Shown here piece after piece: positions 2,870 through 19,808 of a stretch of DNA of 64,000 nt (positions within the stretch are counted from its first letter, which is position 1; the number at the start of each line of letters is the position of its first letter). This DNA comes from Blepharisma stoltei ATCC 30299. Lineage: Eukaryota; Protista; Ciliophora. The DNA lies in NCBI GenBank assembly GCA_965603825.1, contig CBFDEM010000011.1, positions 496,001 to 560,000 on the forward strand, read 5' to 3'. Both the position numbers and the translations under genes were made by a program. The notes under the pieces are model-generated. The model did no database searches and was not told where the DNA came from. It saw nothing but the letters and a program-made list of their open reading frames with translations.

Positions 2870-4120
2870 CTAACTGTGCAGCTGACTTATGGTATCTTGC
2901 ATTTCGCTCTCAATCCTTCTGCTATTTATCATCTTGTCAGTTGCCATAATTCTGTTCTGATAAATTTGTTGTCTTGTTATTGACTGTTCTAAATATGTAA
3001 ACATATGCGAATTTATAAACATCGGATAATACTGGTTCAGCAAAGTGCTGTAAGTATGGGCCTGGATCACTCTAACCGATTCCCTGTCAGGGATATTTAG
3101 CTCCATTGCCTGCTTTTTGATTTCCTTTTCTGTCTCATCTGAAGGAATATGATTATAATATTCGCATTTCAGCCACAAATGAATAAACTCAGGCCCTTTG
3201 TCATCATCTGGATATTCTGTTATTGCTTGCTCAAAAGCGTCTAAAGTCACTCTGCACCTTAAAATTAAATCGAGCGACTGTAGCATTTCTATTGTCAAGC
3301 TTTCTGAGAAGTCTTCCTTATGAAAAGTCCTGAATAATGGGAAAAGTGAAGTTGCTATCATTGCGACATTGTCTCGAATTAAGAAAGCCCATCTCCAAGC
3401 ATTTTTTATATAAACAGTATATTTTGTATCTAATGAATTTATTGTGAAAAATCCACCGACAAACCAAAGAAAGCAGACAAAAGTCAGTTCTTTTTGCATT
3501 TGGAAATCGTCATTTACATTTCGTAAAAAGTAAACGAGGAAAATAAAAATAAGTTCTTCGAAAAATGAGGTAATTACATAAGCCATTAAAGTGTAGAGAT
3601 CGATATCTTGCCCTCGGGCGTTGCAGTAGCTTGATGGGTAATATTCGTGAATCTGAGGAACAAGGTTTAAAAGTGCAATTACGATGAATGGGAGCATTAA
3701 ATAGCAAAATACCTTAAGCAGCCATTCTTGGTGCGTTCTGTGTATATTGTTTCTGAAATGTTGGTCTTTGCTGTCATTTTTGTCTCAGTTTTTATCTAAG
3801 TGAAAAATAAAGTAAACTCTATATCCTCTTAAAACATAGCTTAAGAATAAGCAATATCTAGAAAGAACTGATAGCGTTTGATAAATATATTGCAAATAGC
3901 TTTCATCATTATCAGGATGGCAGTCATGACTAAAGTAAAGAGCAAAAAGGTAAACATTAGTTTCTATATAGTTTCCCCAATGTGACAAGTGAACTAAGCA
4001 CGGACTCATATTCTTGATAGGCACTTTTGATGACCTGAACATCAGTAGAATTCCTACTGGAATGTAAATCAATGCTTCTAAGCATAGTCATATTATGCTC
4101 ACAAACCTCACTGTTTCCAT
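2870..4120 (-). CDS. Multi-pass (about 7TM) membrane protein with C-terminal RGS domain
   Basis: One frame from ATG 4120 through TGA=W at 4088-4090 and 3785-3787. Hydrophobic helices are followed by RGS-like SLDLILRCRVTLDAFEQ...EFIHLWLKCEYY...LLNQYYPMFINSHMF. Confidence 0.75.
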
Positions 4121-13079: not shown

Positions 13080-14592
13080 CTAATTATTAGAAAAATGCTT
13101 TTCCTTGAGCATTGCAGTCATCATTTTTTCGAACTCTAGAAAGTCGATTTCTCCATCTCCATTTAAATCAACCTCCTCTAAGATTTCTTTCCATATATAA
13201 TCAGTATCTTCATCCCCATCATCCAAAAGCCACTTCAACTCATTCACAGTGATTTTTCCACTATGATCTTTATCATAGCTCTCAAAAGCTGCCAGGAGCC
13301 TTTGCTTGGAAAGTGACTGTTCTCAGTTCAAAGTGACAGTGATAAATTCGTTATAATCTATAAACCCATTGCCATCAATATCACACCTTTCCATGAGCTC
13401 ATCAATCTGTATAGGTATTTTTATTTCTATTTGACTAAATCCATTGATGACTTCATCTTTACTGAGCCTTCCATCGTTATTCACGTCAAGTTGCTTAAAC
13501 GATTTTGCCAAGCTTTGGGTTTCTTTATAAGTCACTAGCTGTGAACTGATATAGAATAAGGTTGCTTTTTGGAGCCTATATTGAGATTGGAAGCCGGCTA
13601 AGTTATTTAAGGCTTGGTTCGCTAAAGGGATATCTAGCTGTTCTTTGGCAAGACTCATTCATGGGTGTTCCAAAACCTCTTTGGTGCCATATCGTCTGTT
13701 TACATCTCGGTCTATCATATGCTTGATCAAATCAATTGCATCTCTTGATATGCAGTTCCAATGCCTCTCAGGAAACTCCAAAGGTCCAGATTGTACAAGC
13801 TTCAGCAAGTCTCTTTTACTTTTAGAGTGAAAAGGAGGTCTCCCAGAGAGCATCACATACAAAATCACTCCACAGCTTCATATGTCGCACTTTTCATTAT
13901 ATTCACCAGAAAGTACCTCTGGAGCTACATAATAAGGCCTAATTAAATCTTACTGTCCCCACAGGCTTGTCTATAATTTTGTTGCTGTCCATCAAAATTG
14001 CACAGCCAAAGTCACAAATTTTTAAATCAGAGCTTTCTTCATTAGGAAACATTATATTTTCAGGCTTTAAGTCTCTATGAGCGACTCCATTGCTGTGGCA
14101 ATAGGATAAAGCTTGAATTAAGTCCTCCATATATTTCGCAGCAACGCCTTCTGTCAGCTTTTTTGATTTTACTATCCGATCAAAGAGCTCGCCTCCTGTG
14201 CAAAGCTCCATAACGATATGGAGAATTGACGGCTGCTCAATAACTTCAATAACTTTTACTATGTTGGGGTGGTCAAGCTGCCTGAGAATTTCGATCTCGT
14301 GGGCGGTTTGTGGGATAACTTTGCTTTTGCTGACTGATTTAATGGCTCTATCAAGCTGTGTGGACTTTTGTCAAGCAAGATAAACGTTTCCGAATTTGCC
14401 ATGTCCAATTTCTTTCACAATTGTATATTTTTCTAATAGGCTGCCATAGAAGAATTTGATAAAATTTGCTTTTTGAAAGAACTGTCCAGTTGACGACCTA
14501 ATTGAGAGCAAAGATGTGGAGGTTTTTGTTGTGAGTTGGGGTTGAGTTGGCTTTCTAGGACGATCTATACCACTATTTAGACAGCAACCCAT
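13080..14592 (-). CDS. Calcium-dependent protein kinase (kinase + 4 EF-hands, MGCC acylation site)
   Basis: GHGKFG, HRDLKPEN, DFG, APE, DI-W(TGA 13878)-SCGV; EF-hands DVNNDG, DIDGNG, DKDHSG, DLNGDG. Several TGA=W codons and one tiny intron at about 13938-13953. Confidence 0.9.
13938..13953 (-). other. Tiny intron in CDPK (15-nt GT-AG or 16-nt GT-GG)
   Basis: GTAAGATTTAATTAG|G interrupts GT^PYYVAPE; only removal of 16 nt restores the frame. Confidence 0.75.
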
Positions 14593-15455
14593 TTATATCT
14601 CATTAAATCTATACATGAGCTTAAAAATTGACAGGTGAAATAATAAAATTAATGAGGAATTTTGAAAACATTACTTACTATTTGTTCACTGAAAAATTTT
14701 TGATTTGAAATTACTATTAAAAAACTTAACAGATTTTTGGTCCAGATGTATTCCTTGAAGACATTTTCTTAGCACTGTTCGCTCAAATTTTGATAAGAAA
14801 TGCTCTTTCGAGCAATGCCTTATGGGAAAAGAGGAAATTGCTTGTGCGGAAAATATCGGTGAAGAAAAATCATAAAGCCTTAAGAAGAAATAATTGCGAA
14901 TAAAAAATATTATTAATGAGCTATTTAATCTTTGAATTTTTAAGAATTGATAATAAGATCCGTTATATGAATATGATAAGAATGCAGCTATATTTCATAT
15001 AATCCAAAGAATGAATAATACTCTCAGCTTTGCTAAGGAATTTAATCTCAATGACAGAGCTAATATTTTTATAGAAGCAACCATAATACCAAATTCTGGA
15101 AAATAAATTATGGCAAATAGAAACACATATCAATTTCAGAAAACAATAATTCCAATAATTATATTATTAACTCTTAAAATAATTGGGCTTATAAAATACT
15201 CCCAATCTTATCTAATATTTATAGTGCAGGGACACTTTAGCTCGCCCTTACATTTAAAGCTGTTATGCAACTTGGAGATTGACTCGCTATCTCCAAAACT
15301 AGGCTGGAAAAACTAGACCCTCTAATTGAAGGTGATAAGCCAAATCTCCAAATTGCTGCAAAGGTGCAAGCTTAAGGGCACACTCTGTGATGCCCATGCT
15401 GTATTATATAACATATTACTATTTCTGCCTGATAATCGTCATAAAATCAACTAAA

Positions 15456-18332
15456 ATGGAGCCAGCTGCAAAGCGTAGATTTATCAGCCAGATTGTTGAG
15501 AACTCAGGCAAGAGTCTTGAGGACATTTCAAAAGAACGAGAGCTCCTAGCTCAAAATAAGCCAGTTCTCCTCAAATATATTGCAGATTCAGTAATCGGCG
15601 ACCGCATGCTGTTCCCCACTCCGTATGGGGACCGACCTCTTGTATACGCCGATTACACCGCATCTGGCCGTTCTCTTTCCTTCATTGAAGATTATATTCG
15701 TGAAGTCATCTTAACCAATTATTCAAACACCCACACCTATACCTCCTGGGTAGGCCTGCAAACTCAATTTTTCAGACACGAATCGAGATCTATCATCCAT
15801 CGATGTGTCAATGCATCTGAAGACGACGTTGTTCTCTTTGCAGGAAGTGGCTGCACAGGCGCTGCCAATAAGATTGTTGAAATCATGAAAAGAACCAACT
15901 GGGGTCACGAAAGCTGCAATTACCAGCAAAATCGTTGGGGATCAATAGACTGCAAAACTTGTTCTCTTGCCTTTTCAACACAAGGGACTTTTCATAAGCA
16001 CTTGCAGTCAGTCTTGCACAAGACTAACACACAAAACGCTGATGGACATGCCCAAGTAGAAAACTCACAGCCTATAATTTTCTTGTCAATTTATGAGCAC
16101 CACTCAAATTTGCTGCCGTGGAGAGAAGCTGGCGCAAATATAGTGACAATTGGGGAAAACCCTGACGGGACACTTAACTTAGAGCAGCTTGAAGAAGAGC
16201 TCAAAAAATACCAAAACCACCCTCATAAAATAGGCTCATTTTCAGCAGCGTCAAATATAACTGGAATTCTAACAAATGTGGAAGCCATAAGCAAGCTGCT
16301 TCATAGCTATGACGCTCTTGCATTTTTCGATTATGCAGCTGCAGCTCCATATGTAAGAATCAATATGAACCCTTCCAAAGATGCAGCAATTGACGCAATA
16401 TTTTTATCACCTCATAAATTCCCAGGAGGGCCTGGAACTCCTGGTATTTTAGTCGTCAAGAAAAAATTGCTGGGCAATGAAGTCCCTACAAATGTAGGAG
16501 GCGGGACTGTATTTTTTGTGACCGCCCAAGACCATACATATTTTATTAATCCTGAAGAAAGAGAAGAAGGCGGAACTCCTGACATTGTAGGAGCCATTAG
16601 GGCTGGGCTAGCATTTCAGCTTAAAGAAGCTGTTGGAGAAGAAACAATTGAGGAAAGAGAAAACGAGCTAGCAAACAGAGCAAAGTCAAGACTGGAGAGA
16701 AACCCAAATATAGTGATCTTAAGCAATGGAACTGCTCCAAGACTACCAATTTTCTCGTTTTTAATCAGATGTGGAAACAGATTTTTCCATCACAGCTATA
16801 TCGCAGCACTTCTAAATGATTTATTCGGAATCGAATGCAGGGCAGGCTGTGCCTGTGCAAACCCTTATGGGCTCAACTTGATGGGAATTGATTATAATTT
16901 ATCGAAGGATTTGCAAAATATGCTAAATGAAGGCTTTGACTTGTTCAGGCCAGGGTTTGTGAGGATCAATCTTAATTATTTCTTCAGTGATGACACTGTG
17001 GAATATATTTTGAAAGCAGTTGAGTTTATAGCTGACAATGCCTTATGGTTCTTGCCACAGTATAAATTTGACATGGACAAGGCTGCTTTTGCCCATCGTG
17101 CCTTTAGCACCAAAGCTGGGAGACACCAAGTGAGAAAATGGCTAGGAGAAATTTCATATGCGCCTGGCTCAATAACATACCCGAACTATCTTCCGAAAAA
17201 AGAGGAAAATTTGATTATATATATAGAAAAAGCTGAAGAACTTGCAAGAGAAATACAGCAAAATAGGTATGCTCATAAAAACCTATCTGACCACAGAGTA
17301 GAAATCCCAGCAGAGTTTGAGCACTTGCGCTGGTTTATTTTACCTTCAGAAGCTCTAGGATTTATTCAAAGCAAAGGAATCAACTTCCAGAGTGCCACTT
17401 CTCCGTTTTACCCGAAAAATTATGCAGGAATAGTCCAGCCAGAAGCAGTTCTCCCTAATGCTCTGCCACCTATGAAAGTACACAGAAGAGATAAAAAACA
17501 GCCCCCTTTATGGCCAAAAGTTCCGAAGAAGATCATGAGAAATGTAACAAAGGCGATTGTAGATTTTGATATGATTAAGGATGGCGACAAAGTAATAGTT
17601 TGTATTTCTGGAGGAAAGGACTCTTTGACTTTGCTGCATGCTCTGAAACAAATGCAAAGGGTTTCTAAAAAGAACTTTGAGATTGCTGCTGCTACCGTGG
17701 ATCCTCAAACTCCTGAATATGACCCATCTCCATTAAAAGACTATTTAGCGACTTTACAAGTTCCTTATTTCTATGAATCTCAGCCAATTATTGAACTGGC
17801 AGCCCAAAAAATGACCAAAAAGATTTCTCTCTGTGCATTCTGCTCAAGACTCAAGAGAGGGATTCTTTATTCTTGTGCCAGGAGAGAAGGATATAACGTC
17901 CTTGCCTTAGGCCAGCATTTGGACGACCTAGCAGAAAGTTTTGTCATGTCAGCATTCCACAATGGTCTATTAAGAACCATGAAAGCAAGCTATGTGAACG
18001 ACAAAGGCGATTTAAGAGTCATCAGGCCACTTGTATATGTCAGAGAAAAACTAACAAAAGAATTCGCTGAATTCGCCAAACTCCCAATCATCACTGAGAA
18101 CTGTCCTGGCTGTTTTGCTGCGCCAACTGAAAGACATAGGACAAAATTGCTGTTGGCTTCTCAAGAGCAGATTATTCCTGATCTGTATAGTAGCTTATTA
18201 AATACAATGAAGCCCATTATGAGAGGAAATCTTGACGACTTGCTAGGAAAAAGACCTAGAGAAGAAGACGAAGAAAATGAAAAAGAGGAATGTGAAGAAG
18301 AATGCGAGCAGTGCGTTTTCAACCCAGTTTAA
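15456..18332 (+). CDS. Fusion of cysteine desulfurase-like (class V aminotransferase) domain, inserted C2H2 Zn finger and TtcA-like PP-loop tRNA thiolase
   Basis: Desulfurase part: YADYTASGR, EHHSN, DYAAA, SPHKF (PLP Lys), GGTP, RAGCACA (catalytic Cys). Zn finger: CKTC-x12-H-x5-H. TtcA part: SGGKDS, CAFCSRLKRG, GQHLDD, IRPL, NCPGC. Confidence 0.9.
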   Translation: MEPAAKRRFISQIVENSGKSLEDISKERELLAQNKPVLLKYIADSVIGDRMLFPTPYGDRPLVYADYTASGRSLSFIEDYIREVILTNYSNTHTYTSWVGLQTQFFRHESRSIIHRCVNASEDDVVLFAGSGCTGAANKIVEIMKRTNWGHESCNYQQNRWGSIDCKTCSLAFSTQGTFHKHLQSVLHKTNTQNADGHAQVENSQPIIFLSIYEHHSNLLPWREAGANIVTIGENPDGTLNLEQLEEELKKYQNHPHKIGSFSAASNITGILTNVEAISKLLHSYDALAFFDYAAAAPYVRINMNPSKDAAIDAIFLSPHKFPGGPGTPGILVVKKKLLGNEVPTNVGGGTVFFVTAQDHTYFINPEEREEGGTPDIVGAIRAGLAFQLKEAVGEETIEERENELANRAKSRLERNPNIVILSNGTAPRLPIFSFLIRCGNRFFHHSYIAALLNDLFGIECRAGCACANPYGLNLMGIDYNLSKDLQNMLNEGFDLFRPGFVRINLNYFFSDDTVEYILKAVEFIADNALWFLPQYKFDMDKAAFAHRAFSTKAGRHQVRKWLGEISYAPGSITYPNYLPKKEENLIIYIEKAEELAREIQQNRYAHKNLSDHRVEIPAEFEHLRWFILPSEALGFIQSKGINFQSATSPFYPKNYAGIVQPEAVLPNALPPMKVHRRDKKQPPLWPKVPKKIMRNVTKAIVDFDMIKDGDKVIVCISGGKDSLTLLHALKQMQRVSKKNFEIAAATVDPQTPEYDPSPLKDYLATLQVPYFYESQPIIELAAQKMTKKISLCAFCSRLKRGILYSCARREGYNVLALGQHLDDLAESFVMSAFHNGLLRTMKASYVNDKGDLRVIRPLVYVREKLTKEFAEFAKLPIITENCPGCFAAPTERHRTKLLLASQEQIIPDLYSSLLNTMKPIMRGNLDDLLGKRPREEDEENEKEECEEECEQCVFNPV

Positions 18333-18365
18333 ATTGAAGCCAATTAATTATTCATAAGATAAAAT

Positions 18366-19577
18366 ATGAAAACAAATAGTCTTCAGGTCTCTGGGTATGG
18401 ACTCAAAACAGATTTTTCTGATAAAATCTCAATTGATCCAAACTTAGCAATACTCAGACATCCAAATTTGGATTTCAACCCGACATTCATTTTTCTAAAA
18501 GAAGAACTTCAAAAGTTTTATAGAGACAGAAGAAGGCCGTTTGATAGACAAATAATGCATCGGACGCATTCAAGTAACTGGAAGGAAAGGTTTTTCACGT
18601 CTTTGCAAACGCTGCTAAGCGAGCTTACTTTTACAGAGGACTTAGAACTGCAAAGTAAGATGCTAGAGAAAGTCGAAAATTGATACAACAATAAAATTGT
18701 GAGAGAAGAGTCAATAGAAGAAGAAATAAACCTTGAACCTAAAACACCAGTTTTAAGAGTCAAACCTAAATTGGAGACAAGTCTGCTGGTACCTTTAAGA
18801 AGTGAGTCAATGAGTCCACAAAGAAAGTCAACTGTGCCTTACATCCCTAAAAAGCTGCCGAGTTTAATAAAATCGTATGAGAAGCCTCTTGAATTCAAAA
18901 AAAGGCTGCAAACTAGTTTCAAAAACACAAGAAATGAGAAAAAAGAAGCACTTCTTCCTACTGAAATCAAAGCTCTGAATGGAGATGAAACAGTTTCAAC
19001 AAAAATAGAAAGGATAGCAAGACTTCGGCCTGCTACACAACAAGAAAGGCCTTTTACTGAAACTTCACCTCTTGTCATGACTTCTAGAGGGGAATTTGTT
19101 ATGACTAAATCAAATAAAGCAAATGTTTTTGACTTCAGGGCAACTGACAAAACGAGGTCAACGGTAGCTAGTCCTGAGCAAAGTCCTTTGGGCTCTTCAG
19201 TAAATAAAGCTAGGGTTTCTGCATTTTCCTTTAGAGAAATGGACTCAGTCTTCAAAACTCAAATTGTCAGTCCTTCTATTAATGATGAAGAAATTGCTAA
19301 TAGTTATCAACCGATCAGTCCTTTAAACAAGTCTGTAATTGAGCAGCTTGGGGAAATTCTACATGTTAAAAATCGACTGGCTGCAAGAAAAGTGTCATGC
19401 CCTTATCGGGTTCTTGAGCGTGCTCTTTATGACAGAGAGTTAGACTTTAATAAATCTTTTGATCCTTCACAATTACCTAAAGGTAATGAACGATTGCTGA
19501 AAAATCCAGCATATAAGGAAGAAAAGCCCAAGAAGAAAGGAAAGAAAAAAGGTAAAAAGAAGAAGTCTGGAAGCTAG
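18366..19577 (+). CDS. Hypothetical protein with Lys-rich C-terminus
   Basis: Two ORF-track pieces joined in frame by TGA=W at 18681-18683. Confidence 0.75.
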
Positions 19578-19808
19578 TGGCCAATTAAAGACAATAAATG
19601 TTTCATTTATTTATGATAAATTTGAATTAAATTATTTATTCAAACTCCCTCAATCGAAAATTAGGTAAAGGCTGAGTTTTGCATTTAATTTGATTTTTCA
19701 AATAGCCGAAATATTTATTTTCTATTCTACCCAAAAATTTCCAATTAAAAATATTTTAATTTGATAATAAAAATAGAGCACTCCTTATTAAATTTTTTTA
19801 ATAAGAAA

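What the first reader, a model, noticed from the sequence alone, without database searches (positions are those of the whole stretch)
15456..18332. One-polypeptide sulfur relay: cysteine desulfurase + TtcA-type tRNA thiolase in a eukaryote
Seen: an intact PLP desulfurase-like domain (SPHK, RAGCACA) is fused to a PP-loop domain (SGGKDS, CAFCSRLKRG, GQHLDD, IRPL, NCPGC). Established: bacterial TtcA has just two CxxC motifs, uses an Fe-S cluster and depends on IscS-derived sulfur to make s2C32, whereas eukaryotic Ncs6/CTU1 has extra flanking zinc fingers and uses the Urm1 relay for s2U34. To my knowledge s2C is not an established eukaryotic cytosolic tRNA modification. This domain has the TtcA layout. 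Inference: a self-sufficient, Urm1-independent RNA thiolation enzyme, implying s2C or another thio-nucleoside in ciliate RNA. Similar fusions may exist in other eukaryotes, so the novelty is probably functional rather than architectural.
Basis: partly seen in the sequence, partly recalled or inferred. Interest (0 to 1): 0.8.

Follow-up and report, generated by a model that had tools for sequence, protein, structure and literature searches.

The report
Ciliate desulfurase–TtcA fusion enzyme gene
This Blepharisma gene encodes one expressed protein that joins a sulfur-releasing enzyme to a bacterial-type tRNA-thiolating enzyme. It is the ciliate member of a fusion family found across eukaryotes and recently linked, in a sea slug, to the first 2-thiocytidine seen in a eukaryotic tRNA.

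Summary
Window 15456-18332 (+) is one uninterrupted 958-codon ORF ending in TAA. Transcript-like contigs from four runs each cover it in one gap-free piece.

Residues 34-535 have a SufS/CsdA-type cysteine desulfurase fold. The PLP lysine is K321, and C467 aligns with the SufS catalytic cysteine. Residues about 690-925 are TtcA-like, with a PP-loop and cluster cysteines C793, C796 and C886. They are not Ncs6, TtuA or TilS.

The genome is Blepharisma stoltei. It also carries canonical Ncs6, Urm1 and NFS1, so the fusion is an extra system.

The architecture is not new. 113 of the 120 best database hits share it, across ciliates, oomycetes, Heterolobosea and many invertebrates, and their C-domains form one clade. 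A September 2026 preprint describes the mollusc orthologue next to the first eukaryotic s2C32.

New here:
- the catalytic cysteine assignment
- a conserved roughly 105-residue extension
- a ciliate-only C2H2 finger insert
- closest relatives that are short gammaproteobacterial TtcA-like proteins scoring below the curated TtcA cut-off

Function in the ciliate remains untested. Other scan notes flagged the C2H2 insert elsewhere in this genome.

The parts
15451..18376 (+). Transcribed unit: short 5' UTR (about 5 nt), intronless CDS, about 44-nt 3' UTR
   Evidence: Contig pieces in four runs lie on 15451/15455/15477 to 18303/18339/18373/18376, with no joints or gaps and zero depth on 14568-15450
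15456..18332 (+). CDS, 958 codons plus TAA stop
15555..17060 (+). SufS/CsdA-type (class II) cysteine desulfurase fold, residues 34-535
   Evidence: AF2 model, mean pLDDT 82. VIA-align Z about 32, rmsd 2.4 over about 400 residues against SufS chains, model range 34-535. Pfam Aminotran_5
15903..16064 (+). Ciliate-specific insert (residues about 150-203) holding a C2H2 finger: C166, C169, H182, H188 with spacing CX2CX12HX5H
   Evidence: The insert is present only in the ciliate-clade rows of alignment A1. zf-C2H2_jaz scores 21 bits, just under the 22.6 cut-off. The model shows a beta-beta-alpha element, E164-166, E171-173, H176-183
16095..16103 (+). E214-H215-H216, matching the SufS 'EHHAN' motif
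   Evidence: phmmer alignment to SufS. H215 and H216 are invariant in 35 homologues
16416..16418 (+). K321, predicted PLP Schiff-base lysine (in SPHK)
   Evidence: Aligns with the SufS 'SGHK' lysine. H320 and K321 are invariant
16839..16859 (+). R462-A-G-C465-A-C467-A loop; C467 is the predicted persulfide-forming cysteine
   Evidence: Aligns with SufS 'RAGHHCA', placing C467 on the catalytic Cys. R462, G464, C465 and C467 are invariant in 35 homologues
17061..17375 (+). Conserved extension of the desulfurase module, residues 536-640 (motifs LPQY, RKWLG-ISY, LRWF-LPSEA); no cysteine
   Evidence: The 520-640 segment spanning it has constant length (101-125 aa) in 35 homologues. It is also present in the stand-alone paralogue. 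No Pfam family. No PDB fold, Z 2.4 or less. The Atlas structure search finds the same piece in 601-aa actinobacterial and 667-aa cnidarian desulfurase clusters
17376..17522 (+). Variable linker, residues 641-689
   Evidence: The 640-700 segment spanning it is poorly conserved and runs 53-464 aa in the other homologues. The model has no secondary structure at 638-690 and low pLDDT at 676-681
17523..18230 (+). TtcA-like PP-loop ATP-pyrophosphatase domain, residues 690-925
   Evidence: NCBIfam NF007972 226-230 bits over residues 683-929. 34% identity to E. coli TtcA and 58% to a 257-aa Thermithiobacillus homologue
17607..17624 (+). PP-loop SGGKDS (718-723), ATP binding and adenylation
   Evidence: G719, G720 and S723 are invariant
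17832..17843 (+). C793-x-x-C796, equivalent to E. coli TtcA C122 and C125 ([4Fe-4S] ligands)
   Evidence: BLASTP alignment; mutant data in PMC4081106
18102..18113 (+). C883-x-x-C886. C886 corresponds to E. coli native C213 (the essential 'C222' of the paper); C883 corresponds to the dispensable 'C219'
   Evidence: C883 invariant, C886 in at least 90% of rows
18231..18329 (+). Unconserved acidic tail containing three cysteines (C946, C950, C953)
   Evidence: Conservation 0.1-0.33; pLDDT under 50 at 930-958

Best explanation
The gene is the Blepharisma stoltei orthologue of a eukaryote-wide fusion protein. It joins a class II (SufS/CsdA-like) PLP cysteine desulfurase module to a TtcA-like PP-loop RNA sulfurtransferase domain, and is made from one intronless mRNA. 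Proposed mechanism (inferred): K321-PLP converts free cysteine to alanine and leaves a persulfide on C467. The C-terminal domain holds a [4Fe-4S] cluster on C793, C796 and C886, with one free iron site. It adenylates the C2 oxygen of a tRNA cytidine, most likely C32, using ATP bound at the PP-loop. Sulfur from the tethered desulfurase, reduced on or captured by the cluster, displaces AMP to give 2-thiocytidine. The fusion therefore replaces the bacterial IscS-to-TtcA hand-off by an intramolecular or intradimer transfer. It works beside the cell's Urm1/Ncs6 s2U34 pathway, not instead of it. It still depends on the cell's Fe-S assembly machinery for its cluster. In ciliates a matrin/JAZ-type C2H2 finger inserted in the desulfurase may add an RNA-helix contact.
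For: Shown:
- One ORF and one gap-free transcript contig in four runs.
- SufS fold with Z about 32. K321 and C467 align with the SufS PLP lysine and catalytic cysteine. EHH, K321, R462, C465 and C467 are invariant in 35 homologues.
- The C-domain's best family is TtcA (226-230 bits), far above TilS, TtuA and NcsA.
- The three cysteines essential in E. coli TtcA are conserved.
- It is the only TtcA-like gene in the genome apart from a canonical Ncs6. Urm1 and NFS1 are also present.
- 113 of the 120 best hits have the same two-domain architecture.
- The C-domains of 34 eukaryotic fusions form one clade (97/97) whose branching broadly follows organismal groups.
- A close relative keeps the same single frame.

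From the literature:
- E. coli TtcA needs a [4Fe-4S] cluster, ATP, and a cysteine/IscS sulfur source (PMC4081106).
- s2C32 was detected in Aplysia tRNA-Lys-UUU, and the only Aplysia TtcA homologue is the orthologous fusion (bioRxiv 10.64898/2026.09.27.754811).
Against: - There is no biochemical or genetic test for any member of the family. The Aplysia link is a correlation.
- The C-domain scores under the curated TtcA equivalog cut-off (226-230 against 272 bits).
- Its nearest relatives are a short bacterial subfamily that also scores under the cut-off and that NCBI mostly labels only 'ATP-binding protein'. E. coli TtcA is a very long branch relative to them. Substrate position is therefore not secured.
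- Class II desulfurases normally need an acceptor such as SufE or SufU. None was found, and the extension has no cysteine. Direct transfer to the TtcA domain is therefore assumed, not shown.
- The monomer model gives no reliable inter-domain geometry; pTM is 0.67 and no PAE was available.
Confidence: 0.6

Rival explanations
1. The C-terminal domain is a TtcA-like paralogue with a different target: another position, another nucleoside, or another RNA class. It would not be a C32 thiolase.
For: It is below the TtcA equivalog cut-off. It is 58% identical to a short bacterial subfamily but only 34% to E. coli TtcA, which sits on a very long branch. The function of that short subfamily is not documented in anything I could read.
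Against: TtcA is still by far the best-scoring family. The cluster cysteines and PP-loop match. In Aplysia the orthologue is the only TtcA homologue in a genome whose tRNA carries s2C32 (preprint).
Confidence: 0.2
2. The desulfurase module does not feed sulfur into the nucleoside. Instead it builds or repairs the [4Fe-4S] cluster of its own TtcA domain, or serves as a general cytosolic sulfur or selenium mobiliser, while the nucleoside sulfur comes from elsewhere.
For: A stand-alone paralogue with the same module but no TtcA domain exists in this genome and in Aplysia (preprint), so the module has at least one TtcA-independent role. SufS-type enzymes are Fe-S assembly enzymes and also cleave selenocysteine (PDB titles).
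Against: The fusion is retained across ciliates, oomycetes, Heterolobosea and Metazoa, which argues for tight functional coupling. In vitro, cysteine plus a desulfurase is the sulfur source for TtcA (PMC4081106). The two roles are not mutually exclusive.
Confidence: 0.13
3. The polypeptide is cleaved in the linker, and the halves act as separate proteins, as the Aplysia preprint suggests for the long animal linker.
For: The linker is poorly conserved and varies from 53 to 464 residues.
Against: In ciliates the linker is only about 55-60 residues. No data show cleavage. Persistent fusion over very deep divergences is easier to explain by tethering.
Confidence: 0.05
4. Annotation artefact: two adjacent genes, a pseudogene, or a mis-assembled join.
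For: In a close relative, gene callers split the orthologue into 561-aa and 394-aa products.
Against: That split sits at a single in-frame TGA aligned with the nearly invariant W562, and UGA encodes Trp in Blepharisma (PMC9942806). The window ORF has no stop, and one contig per run spans it.
Confidence: 0.02

Closest known systems
Aplysia californica 'IscS-TtcA' fused protein LOC101861551 and its mollusc orthologues (bioRxiv 10.64898/2026.09.27.754811)
   Same: Same domain order (CsdA/SufS-like, then TtcA-like). Conserved PLP lysine, conserved C-x-C pair (Aplysia C448/C450, here C465/C467), SGGKDS, and two CxxC motifs. Mollusc fusions (Haliotis, Littorina, Mya, Octopus) fall in the same clade as the window protein.
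   Different: The ciliate protein is shorter (958 against 1177 aa), with a linker of about 50 residues in place of about 400. It carries a C2H2 finger insert absent from animals. The Aplysia sequence itself was not at hand, so the comparison is through other molluscs. No tRNA chemistry exists for the ciliate.
Bacterial TtcA, tRNA-cytidine(32) 2-sulfurtransferase (E. coli b1344; PMC4081106)
   Same: PP-loop, both CxxC motifs, and no flanking zinc fingers. 34% identity over 242 residues. Best-scoring NCBIfam model.
   Different: Below the curated cut-off. Fused to its own desulfurase instead of relying on IscS in trans. Lacks the E. coli C-terminal tail. Much closer (55-62%) to 250-260-aa gammaproteobacterial 'TtcA family / ATP-binding' proteins.
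SufS/CsdA class II cysteine desulfurases (e.g. PDB 5db5, 5xt5, 8kg1)
   Same: Whole fold (Z about 32). EHH motif, SxHK lysine, and an R-x-G-x-x-C-A catalytic loop.
   Different: About 25% identity, and far below the SufS family cut-off (145 against 475 bits). A second invariant cysteine two residues upstream (C465). A roughly 105-residue C-terminal extension. A C2H2 insert in ciliates. No SufE found in the genome.
Ncs6/CTU1-Urm1 pathway (s2U34) and TtuA
   Same: Same PP-loop superfamily and a [4Fe-4S]-dependent thiolation chemistry.
   Different: The genome has its own Ncs6 with N- and C-terminal CxxC fingers, scoring 189.5 bits on NcsA. The fusion domain scores 33-38 bits on NcsA and has no flanking fingers.

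Membership tests
TtcA (NCBIfam NF007972 equivalog) | PP-loop SGGxDS | tested here: met
   SGGKDS at 718-723; conserved in 35 homologues
TtcA (NCBIfam NF007972 equivalog) | Three cysteines essential for the [4Fe-4S] cluster (E. coli C122, C125 and native C213, called 'C222' in the paper) | tested here: met
   C793, C796 and C886 align with them
TtcA (NCBIfam NF007972 equivalog) | Score at or above the curated cut-off (272 bits) | tested here: not met
   226 bits for the whole protein and 230 bits for the domain alone. The nearest bacterial relatives also score 201-238 bits
TtcA (NCBIfam NF007972 equivalog) | Forms s2C at position 32 of tRNA; binds a [4Fe-4S] cluster | not testable with these tools
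   Needs tRNA mass spectrometry and biochemistry
Class II cysteine desulfurase (SufS/CsdA) | Fold type I PLP fold with the SufS topology | tested here: met
   Z 32-33, rmsd 2.3-2.5, about 400 aligned residues
Class II cysteine desulfurase (SufS/CsdA) | PLP lysine and catalytic cysteine in an R-x-G-x-x-C-A loop | tested here: met
   K321 and C467 align with the SufS lysine and catalytic cysteine; both invariant
Class II cysteine desulfurase (SufS/CsdA) | Score at or above the SufS subfamily cut-off (TIGR01979, 475 bits) | tested here: not met
   144.8 bits. It is a distinct branch of the superfamily, not SufS proper
Class II cysteine desulfurase (SufS/CsdA) | Dedicated sulfur acceptor (SufE, SufU or CsdE) | tested here: inconclusive
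   No SufE (PF02657) match in the genome, while 5 control genomes gave matches. A six-frame search for a small domain can miss a gene
Eukaryotic desulfurase-TtcA fusion family | Both domains in this order in one polypeptide, and placement inside the eukaryotic clade | tested here: met
   Full-length matches to 113 two-domain proteins among the 120 best. Eukaryote clade 97/97, ciliate subclade 100/98
Ncs6/CTU1/NcsA | N- and C-terminal zinc-finger CxxC pairs, and the best score on the NcsA model | tested here: not met
   No cysteine between 690 and 715, and none from 887 to 945. NcsA scores 33-38 bits, against 189.5 for the genome's own Ncs6
TilS | TilS N-domain score at or above 93.6 bits, plus TilS C-terminal domains | tested here: not met
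   61-64 bits. The protein ends about 70 residues after the second CxxC

The most novel reading that the evidence does not exclude
The fusion is an ancient cytosolic route to s2C32 that does not use Urm1. It was probably acquired once, early in eukaryote evolution, from a proteobacterial-type TtcA-like gene and welded to a long SufS-like desulfurase. It would deliver persulfide sulfur intramolecularly to an Fe-S cluster. That would make s2C32 a widespread but overlooked eukaryotic tRNA modification (ciliates, oomycetes, Heterolobosea, most invertebrate phyla). Ciliates would have added a dsRNA-type zinc finger to the desulfurase for RNA capture.
Probability: 0.4. Interest if true: 0.65.

Novelty: new member of a known kind. 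Interest (0 to 1): 0.4.

Why it matters
If the family does what its parts suggest, eukaryotes outside the usual models have a second tRNA thiolation system that does not use Urm1, and a cysteine desulfurase acting outside the mitochondrial NFS1 route. The ciliate member has a short linker, no introns, and a Stentor orthologue (SteCoe_17341). I recall from my own knowledge that RNAi works in Stentor. This makes it a compact construct for testing intramolecular sulfur transfer. It also offers a protist test of whether the s2C32 just reported in Aplysia is general. By itself the gene is an ordinary member of an already catalogued, partly annotated family.

Tried and rejected
- **Start codon.** The upstream in-frame ATGs at 15390 and 15396 were rejected, because transcript contigs begin at 15451-15477.
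- **Hidden introns.** In-frame 15-nt introns were rejected; there are no joints or indels in four runs.
- **First tree.** The quick tree with TilS and Ncs6 as outgroups was discarded. Their branches of 10 changes per column rooted the tree inside the animals. I rebuilt it without them and without the long-branch row P0016.
- **Operon context.** The Thermithiobacillus homologue has no neighbouring desulfurase; its neighbours are PBP1 and Hsp33.
- **The 536-640 extension.** No Pfam family. No PDB fold, Z 2.4 or less, and the isolated model has pTM 0.45, so it probably packs on the desulfurase body. A profile word search found only two eukaryotic fragments. Atlas feature hits scored under 0.9 and are leads only.
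- **Large representative-protein search.** Not used.
- **Read-through translation.** The relative's gene in L017 was displayed through its TGA with the translate tool only. It was not passed to any search.
Full report
**What is in the sequence**

Window 15456-18332 (+) is a single open frame of 958 codons ending in TAA. The nearest upstream in-frame stop is TAA at 15336-15338. There is no in-frame TGA.

| Motif | Residues |
|---|---|
| SPHK | 318-321 |
| RAGCACA | 462-468 |
| SGGKDS | 718-723 |
| CAFC | 793-796 |
| GQHLDD | 819-824 |
| IRPL | 856-859 |
| NCPGC | 882-886 |

Pfam finds Aminotran_5 (residues 208-471, 8e-43) and the PP-loop family ATP_bind_3 (712-878, 1e-14).

**Organism**

The window lies in a 41.46-Mb, 64-contig assembly. 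A paralogous ORF elsewhere in that assembly is letter-identical to a protein NCBI assigns to Blepharisma stoltei. The published B. stoltei macronuclear genome is 41 Mbp. It has tiny introns and short UTRs, and UGA is reassigned to tryptophan (PMC9942806).

**Expression as one unit**

Four public runs from one study hold the stretch as assembled contigs. Laid on 14300-19800, each run gives one contig that starts at 15451, 15455 or 15477 and ends between 18303 and 18376. These contigs have no mismatches, indels or joints.

- Depth is zero over the upstream intergenic DNA (14568-15450) and beyond 19620.
- The neighbouring genes lie on separate contigs with different depths.

The runs are labelled RNA only by guess. 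This gene-shaped coverage, and total contig sizes of 21-26 Mb against a 41-Mb genome, are what transcript assemblies look like, so I treat them as RNA by inference.

Three conclusions follow:
- The gene has no introns.
- Both halves sit on one transcript.
- The 5' end lies about 5 nt before ATG 15456, so the upstream in-frame ATGs at 15390 and 15396 cannot be the start.

An additional internal transcript cannot be excluded from contigs alone.

**N-terminal module**

- Best sequence matches in the PDB are SufS/CsdB-type desulfurases (about 1e-26).
- In the phmmer alignment to SufS, 'EHHSN' lies on 'EHHAN', 'SPHK' on 'SGHK', and 'RAGCACA' on 'RAGHHCA'. K321 is therefore the PLP lysine, and C467 sits on the SufS catalytic cysteine.
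- An AlphaFold2 model built on 35 homologues has mean pLDDT 82.
- Residues 34-535 of the model superpose on whole SufS chains with Z about 32 and rmsd 2.4 over about 400 residues.
- H215, H216, H320, K321, R462, G464, C465 and C467 are invariant across the 35 aligned proteins.

The Aplysia preprint aligned its protein to IscS, a class I enzyme. It could not find the catalytic cysteine and noted only that C448 and C450 are conserved. The alignment to class II enzymes here resolves this. The second cysteine of that pair is the SufS-equivalent nucleophile.

The module is not SufS proper. It scores 145 bits against a cut-off of 475.

**Two additions to the desulfurase fold**

*A C2H2 finger insert, only in the ciliate clade.* Residues about 150-203 are an insert found only in the ciliate-clade rows of the alignment. 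It is absent from animals, oomycetes and Acrasis; Willaertia has only a short unrelated insert there without the finger.
- It holds a finger with spacing CX2CX12HX5H (C166, C169, H182, H188).
- It scores 21 bits on zf-C2H2_jaz, just under the 22.6-bit threshold. The precomputed Pfam lists carry that family for the paralogue and one relative.
- Other first-stage notes on this genome flagged the same kind of insert on another contig.

*A conserved extension, in all homologues.* Residues 536-640 follow the last SufS helix.
- The 520-640 segment that spans the extension keeps a constant length of 101-125 residues in all 35 proteins.
- It carries conserved motifs and contains no cysteine.
- It is also present in the stand-alone paralogue.
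- It has no Pfam family and no solved structural relative, Z 2.4 or less.
- The Atlas structure search finds it again in a 667-aa cnidarian and a 601-aa actinobacterial 'cysteine desulfurase' cluster. This is a lead only.

The truly variable linker is the next stretch. The 640-700 segment spanning it is 53-464 residues in other species and only 60 here.

**C-terminal domain**

Scores on curated models:

| Protein | TtcA | TilS N-domain | TtuA | NcsA |
|---|---|---|---|---|
| Fusion C-domain | 226-230 bits (cut-off 272) | 61-64 | 53-57 | 33-38 |
| Genome's own Ncs6 (contig 1) | 96.5 | 68.1 | 144 | 189.5 |

The Ncs6 gene is a 304-aa ORF with N- and C-terminal CxxC fingers. No other TtcA-like gene was found in the genome.

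Against E. coli TtcA the identity is 34% over 242 residues. C793 and C796 lie on C122 and C125, and C883 and C886 lie on the second CxxC. Bouvier et al. showed that C122, C125 and 'C222' are essential and probably ligate the [4Fe-4S] cluster, while 'C219' is dispensable (PMC4081106). In the native K-12 sequence that second motif is C210/C213. The paper's numbering is therefore shifted by nine at that motif.

The refutation condition 'groups with Ncs6 or TilS' is not met.

**A caveat on 'TtcA'**

The closest stand-alone relatives are not E. coli-type TtcAs.
- They are proteins of about 250-260 residues from Gammaproteobacteria and Acidithiobacillia, 55-62% identical to the ciliate domain.
- They too score under the TtcA cut-off, at 201-238 bits.
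- NCBI names them variously 'ATP-binding protein' or 'TtcA family protein'.
- In the careful tree, E. coli TtcA is a very long branch attached to this bacterial group.
- In Thermithiobacillus the gene has no desulfurase neighbour.

I could not test whether such bacteria also carry a canonical TtcA. Whether this subfamily is an orthologous or a paralogous form of TtcA stays open.

**Distribution and descent**

Of the 120 best full-length hits, 113 carry both Pfam domains. They come from:
- ciliates (Stentor)
- oomycetes
- Heterolobosea (Acrasis, Willaertia)
- Trichoplax, sponges and cnidarians
- hemichordates, amphioxus and echinoderms
- molluscs, brachiopods and annelids
- chelicerates

Several are already annotated 'tRNA 2-thiocytidine biosynthesis protein TtcA'.

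In a maximum-likelihood tree of the C-domain (row P0016 left out as a long branch), all 34 eukaryotic sequences form one clade against 13 bacterial ones (97/97). Ciliates, oomycetes, Heterolobosea and Metazoa are each recovered as groups, and the window protein falls with Stentor at 100/98. This fits one origin of the eukaryotic domain followed by mostly vertical descent.

Some apparent split versions are artefacts. In a close relative, gene callers produced 561-aa and 394-aa products. The DNA there is one frame with a single TGA, which falls exactly on the nearly invariant W562.

**Genomic setting of sulfur metabolism**

The genome also has NFS1/IscS (657 bits, over its cut-off), Urm1 (94 bits) and Ncs6. 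The fusion is therefore an addition to the canonical s2U34 route. No SufE was found. That result is inconclusive for a small domain searched in six frames.

**Comparison with the literature**

A preprint of 28 September 2026 (bioRxiv 10.64898/2026.09.27.754811) reports the following:
- The only Aplysia TtcA homologue is a 1177-aa 'IscS-TtcA' fusion, conserved in 28 mollusc species.
- A stand-alone desulfurase paralogue is also present.

The authors propose the fusion as a dedicated s2C enzyme. They give no genetic or enzymatic test. Its premise that s2C is unknown in eukaryotes is now out of date.

**Mechanism**

| Shown | Inferred |
|---|---|
| An intact class II desulfurase active site | Persulfide formation on C467 |
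| An intact PP-loop | Transfer of that sulfur to the free iron of a three-cysteine [4Fe-4S] cluster |
| The three cluster cysteines | Adenylation of C32 |
| One polypeptide from one mRNA | Displacement of AMP to give s2C |

'Self-sufficient' overstates the case, because the cluster must come from the cell's Fe-S machinery. Independence from Urm1 is plausible, since TtcA-type enzymes do not use it, but it is untested.

The rival readings are listed with their tests in the Rival explanations section:
- a different RNA target
- a desulfurase that serves cluster assembly or general sulfur supply
- post-translational cleavage

**Verdict**

This is a real, expressed and intact gene. It is a new ciliate member of a known and recently described eukaryotic fusion family, with a lineage-specific zinc-finger insert. 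It is moderately interesting as a test system. It is not a new kind of system.

Noticed in passing
L002:1489-3519 (-), genome contig 13: A 676-aa stand-alone paralogue, 60% identical. It has the same desulfurase fold, C2H2 insert and 536-640 extension but no TtcA domain. It ends in TAA with no PP-loop remnant downstream. Because it shares the ciliate-only insert, the duplication probably happened within ciliates. Its sulfur acceptor is unknown.
   Followed up: partly
window 18366-19577 (+), TGA at 18681-18683: The two downstream ORFs (105 aa and 292 aa) are in one frame, separated by a single TGA. Transcript-like contigs run across it without a gap. It is one roughly 403-codon gene with a UGA sense codon.
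   Followed up: partly
L017:1785-4688 (+), TGA at about 3468-3470: In a close Blepharisma-like relative, the orthologue has one in-frame TGA at the position of the nearly invariant Trp W562. Gene callers therefore split it into P0017 and P0121. Some 'stand-alone' database hits for this family in heterotrichs are code artefacts.
   Followed up: yes
window 18366-18376: The fusion gene's transcript contigs end at up to 18376, while the next gene's ATG is at 18366 and its contigs begin at 18374-18403. Neighbouring transcripts abut or overlap by a few bases.
   Followed up: no
P0220, P0239, P0191, P0152 (bacterial proteins); L006-L008: A family of 250-300-aa TtcA-like proteins in Gammaproteobacteria and Acidithiobacillia scores 201-238 bits on the NCBIfam TtcA model, under its 272-bit cut-off. 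It is much closer to the eukaryotic fusion domain than to E. coli TtcA. Whether it co-occurs with canonical TtcA is untested.
   Followed up: partly
window 18291-18314 (residues 946-953): The unconserved acidic C-terminal tail carries three cysteines spaced as CxxxCxxC. A similar tail is present in the close relative but not in other lineages.
   Followed up: no
L009:4014-4949 (-), E. coli ttcA: The cysteine numbering in Bouvier et al. 2014 (C46, C200, C219, C222) does not match the native K-12 protein (C45, C191, C210, C213), whereas C122 and C125 do match. Take care when transferring residue numbers.
   Followed up: yes
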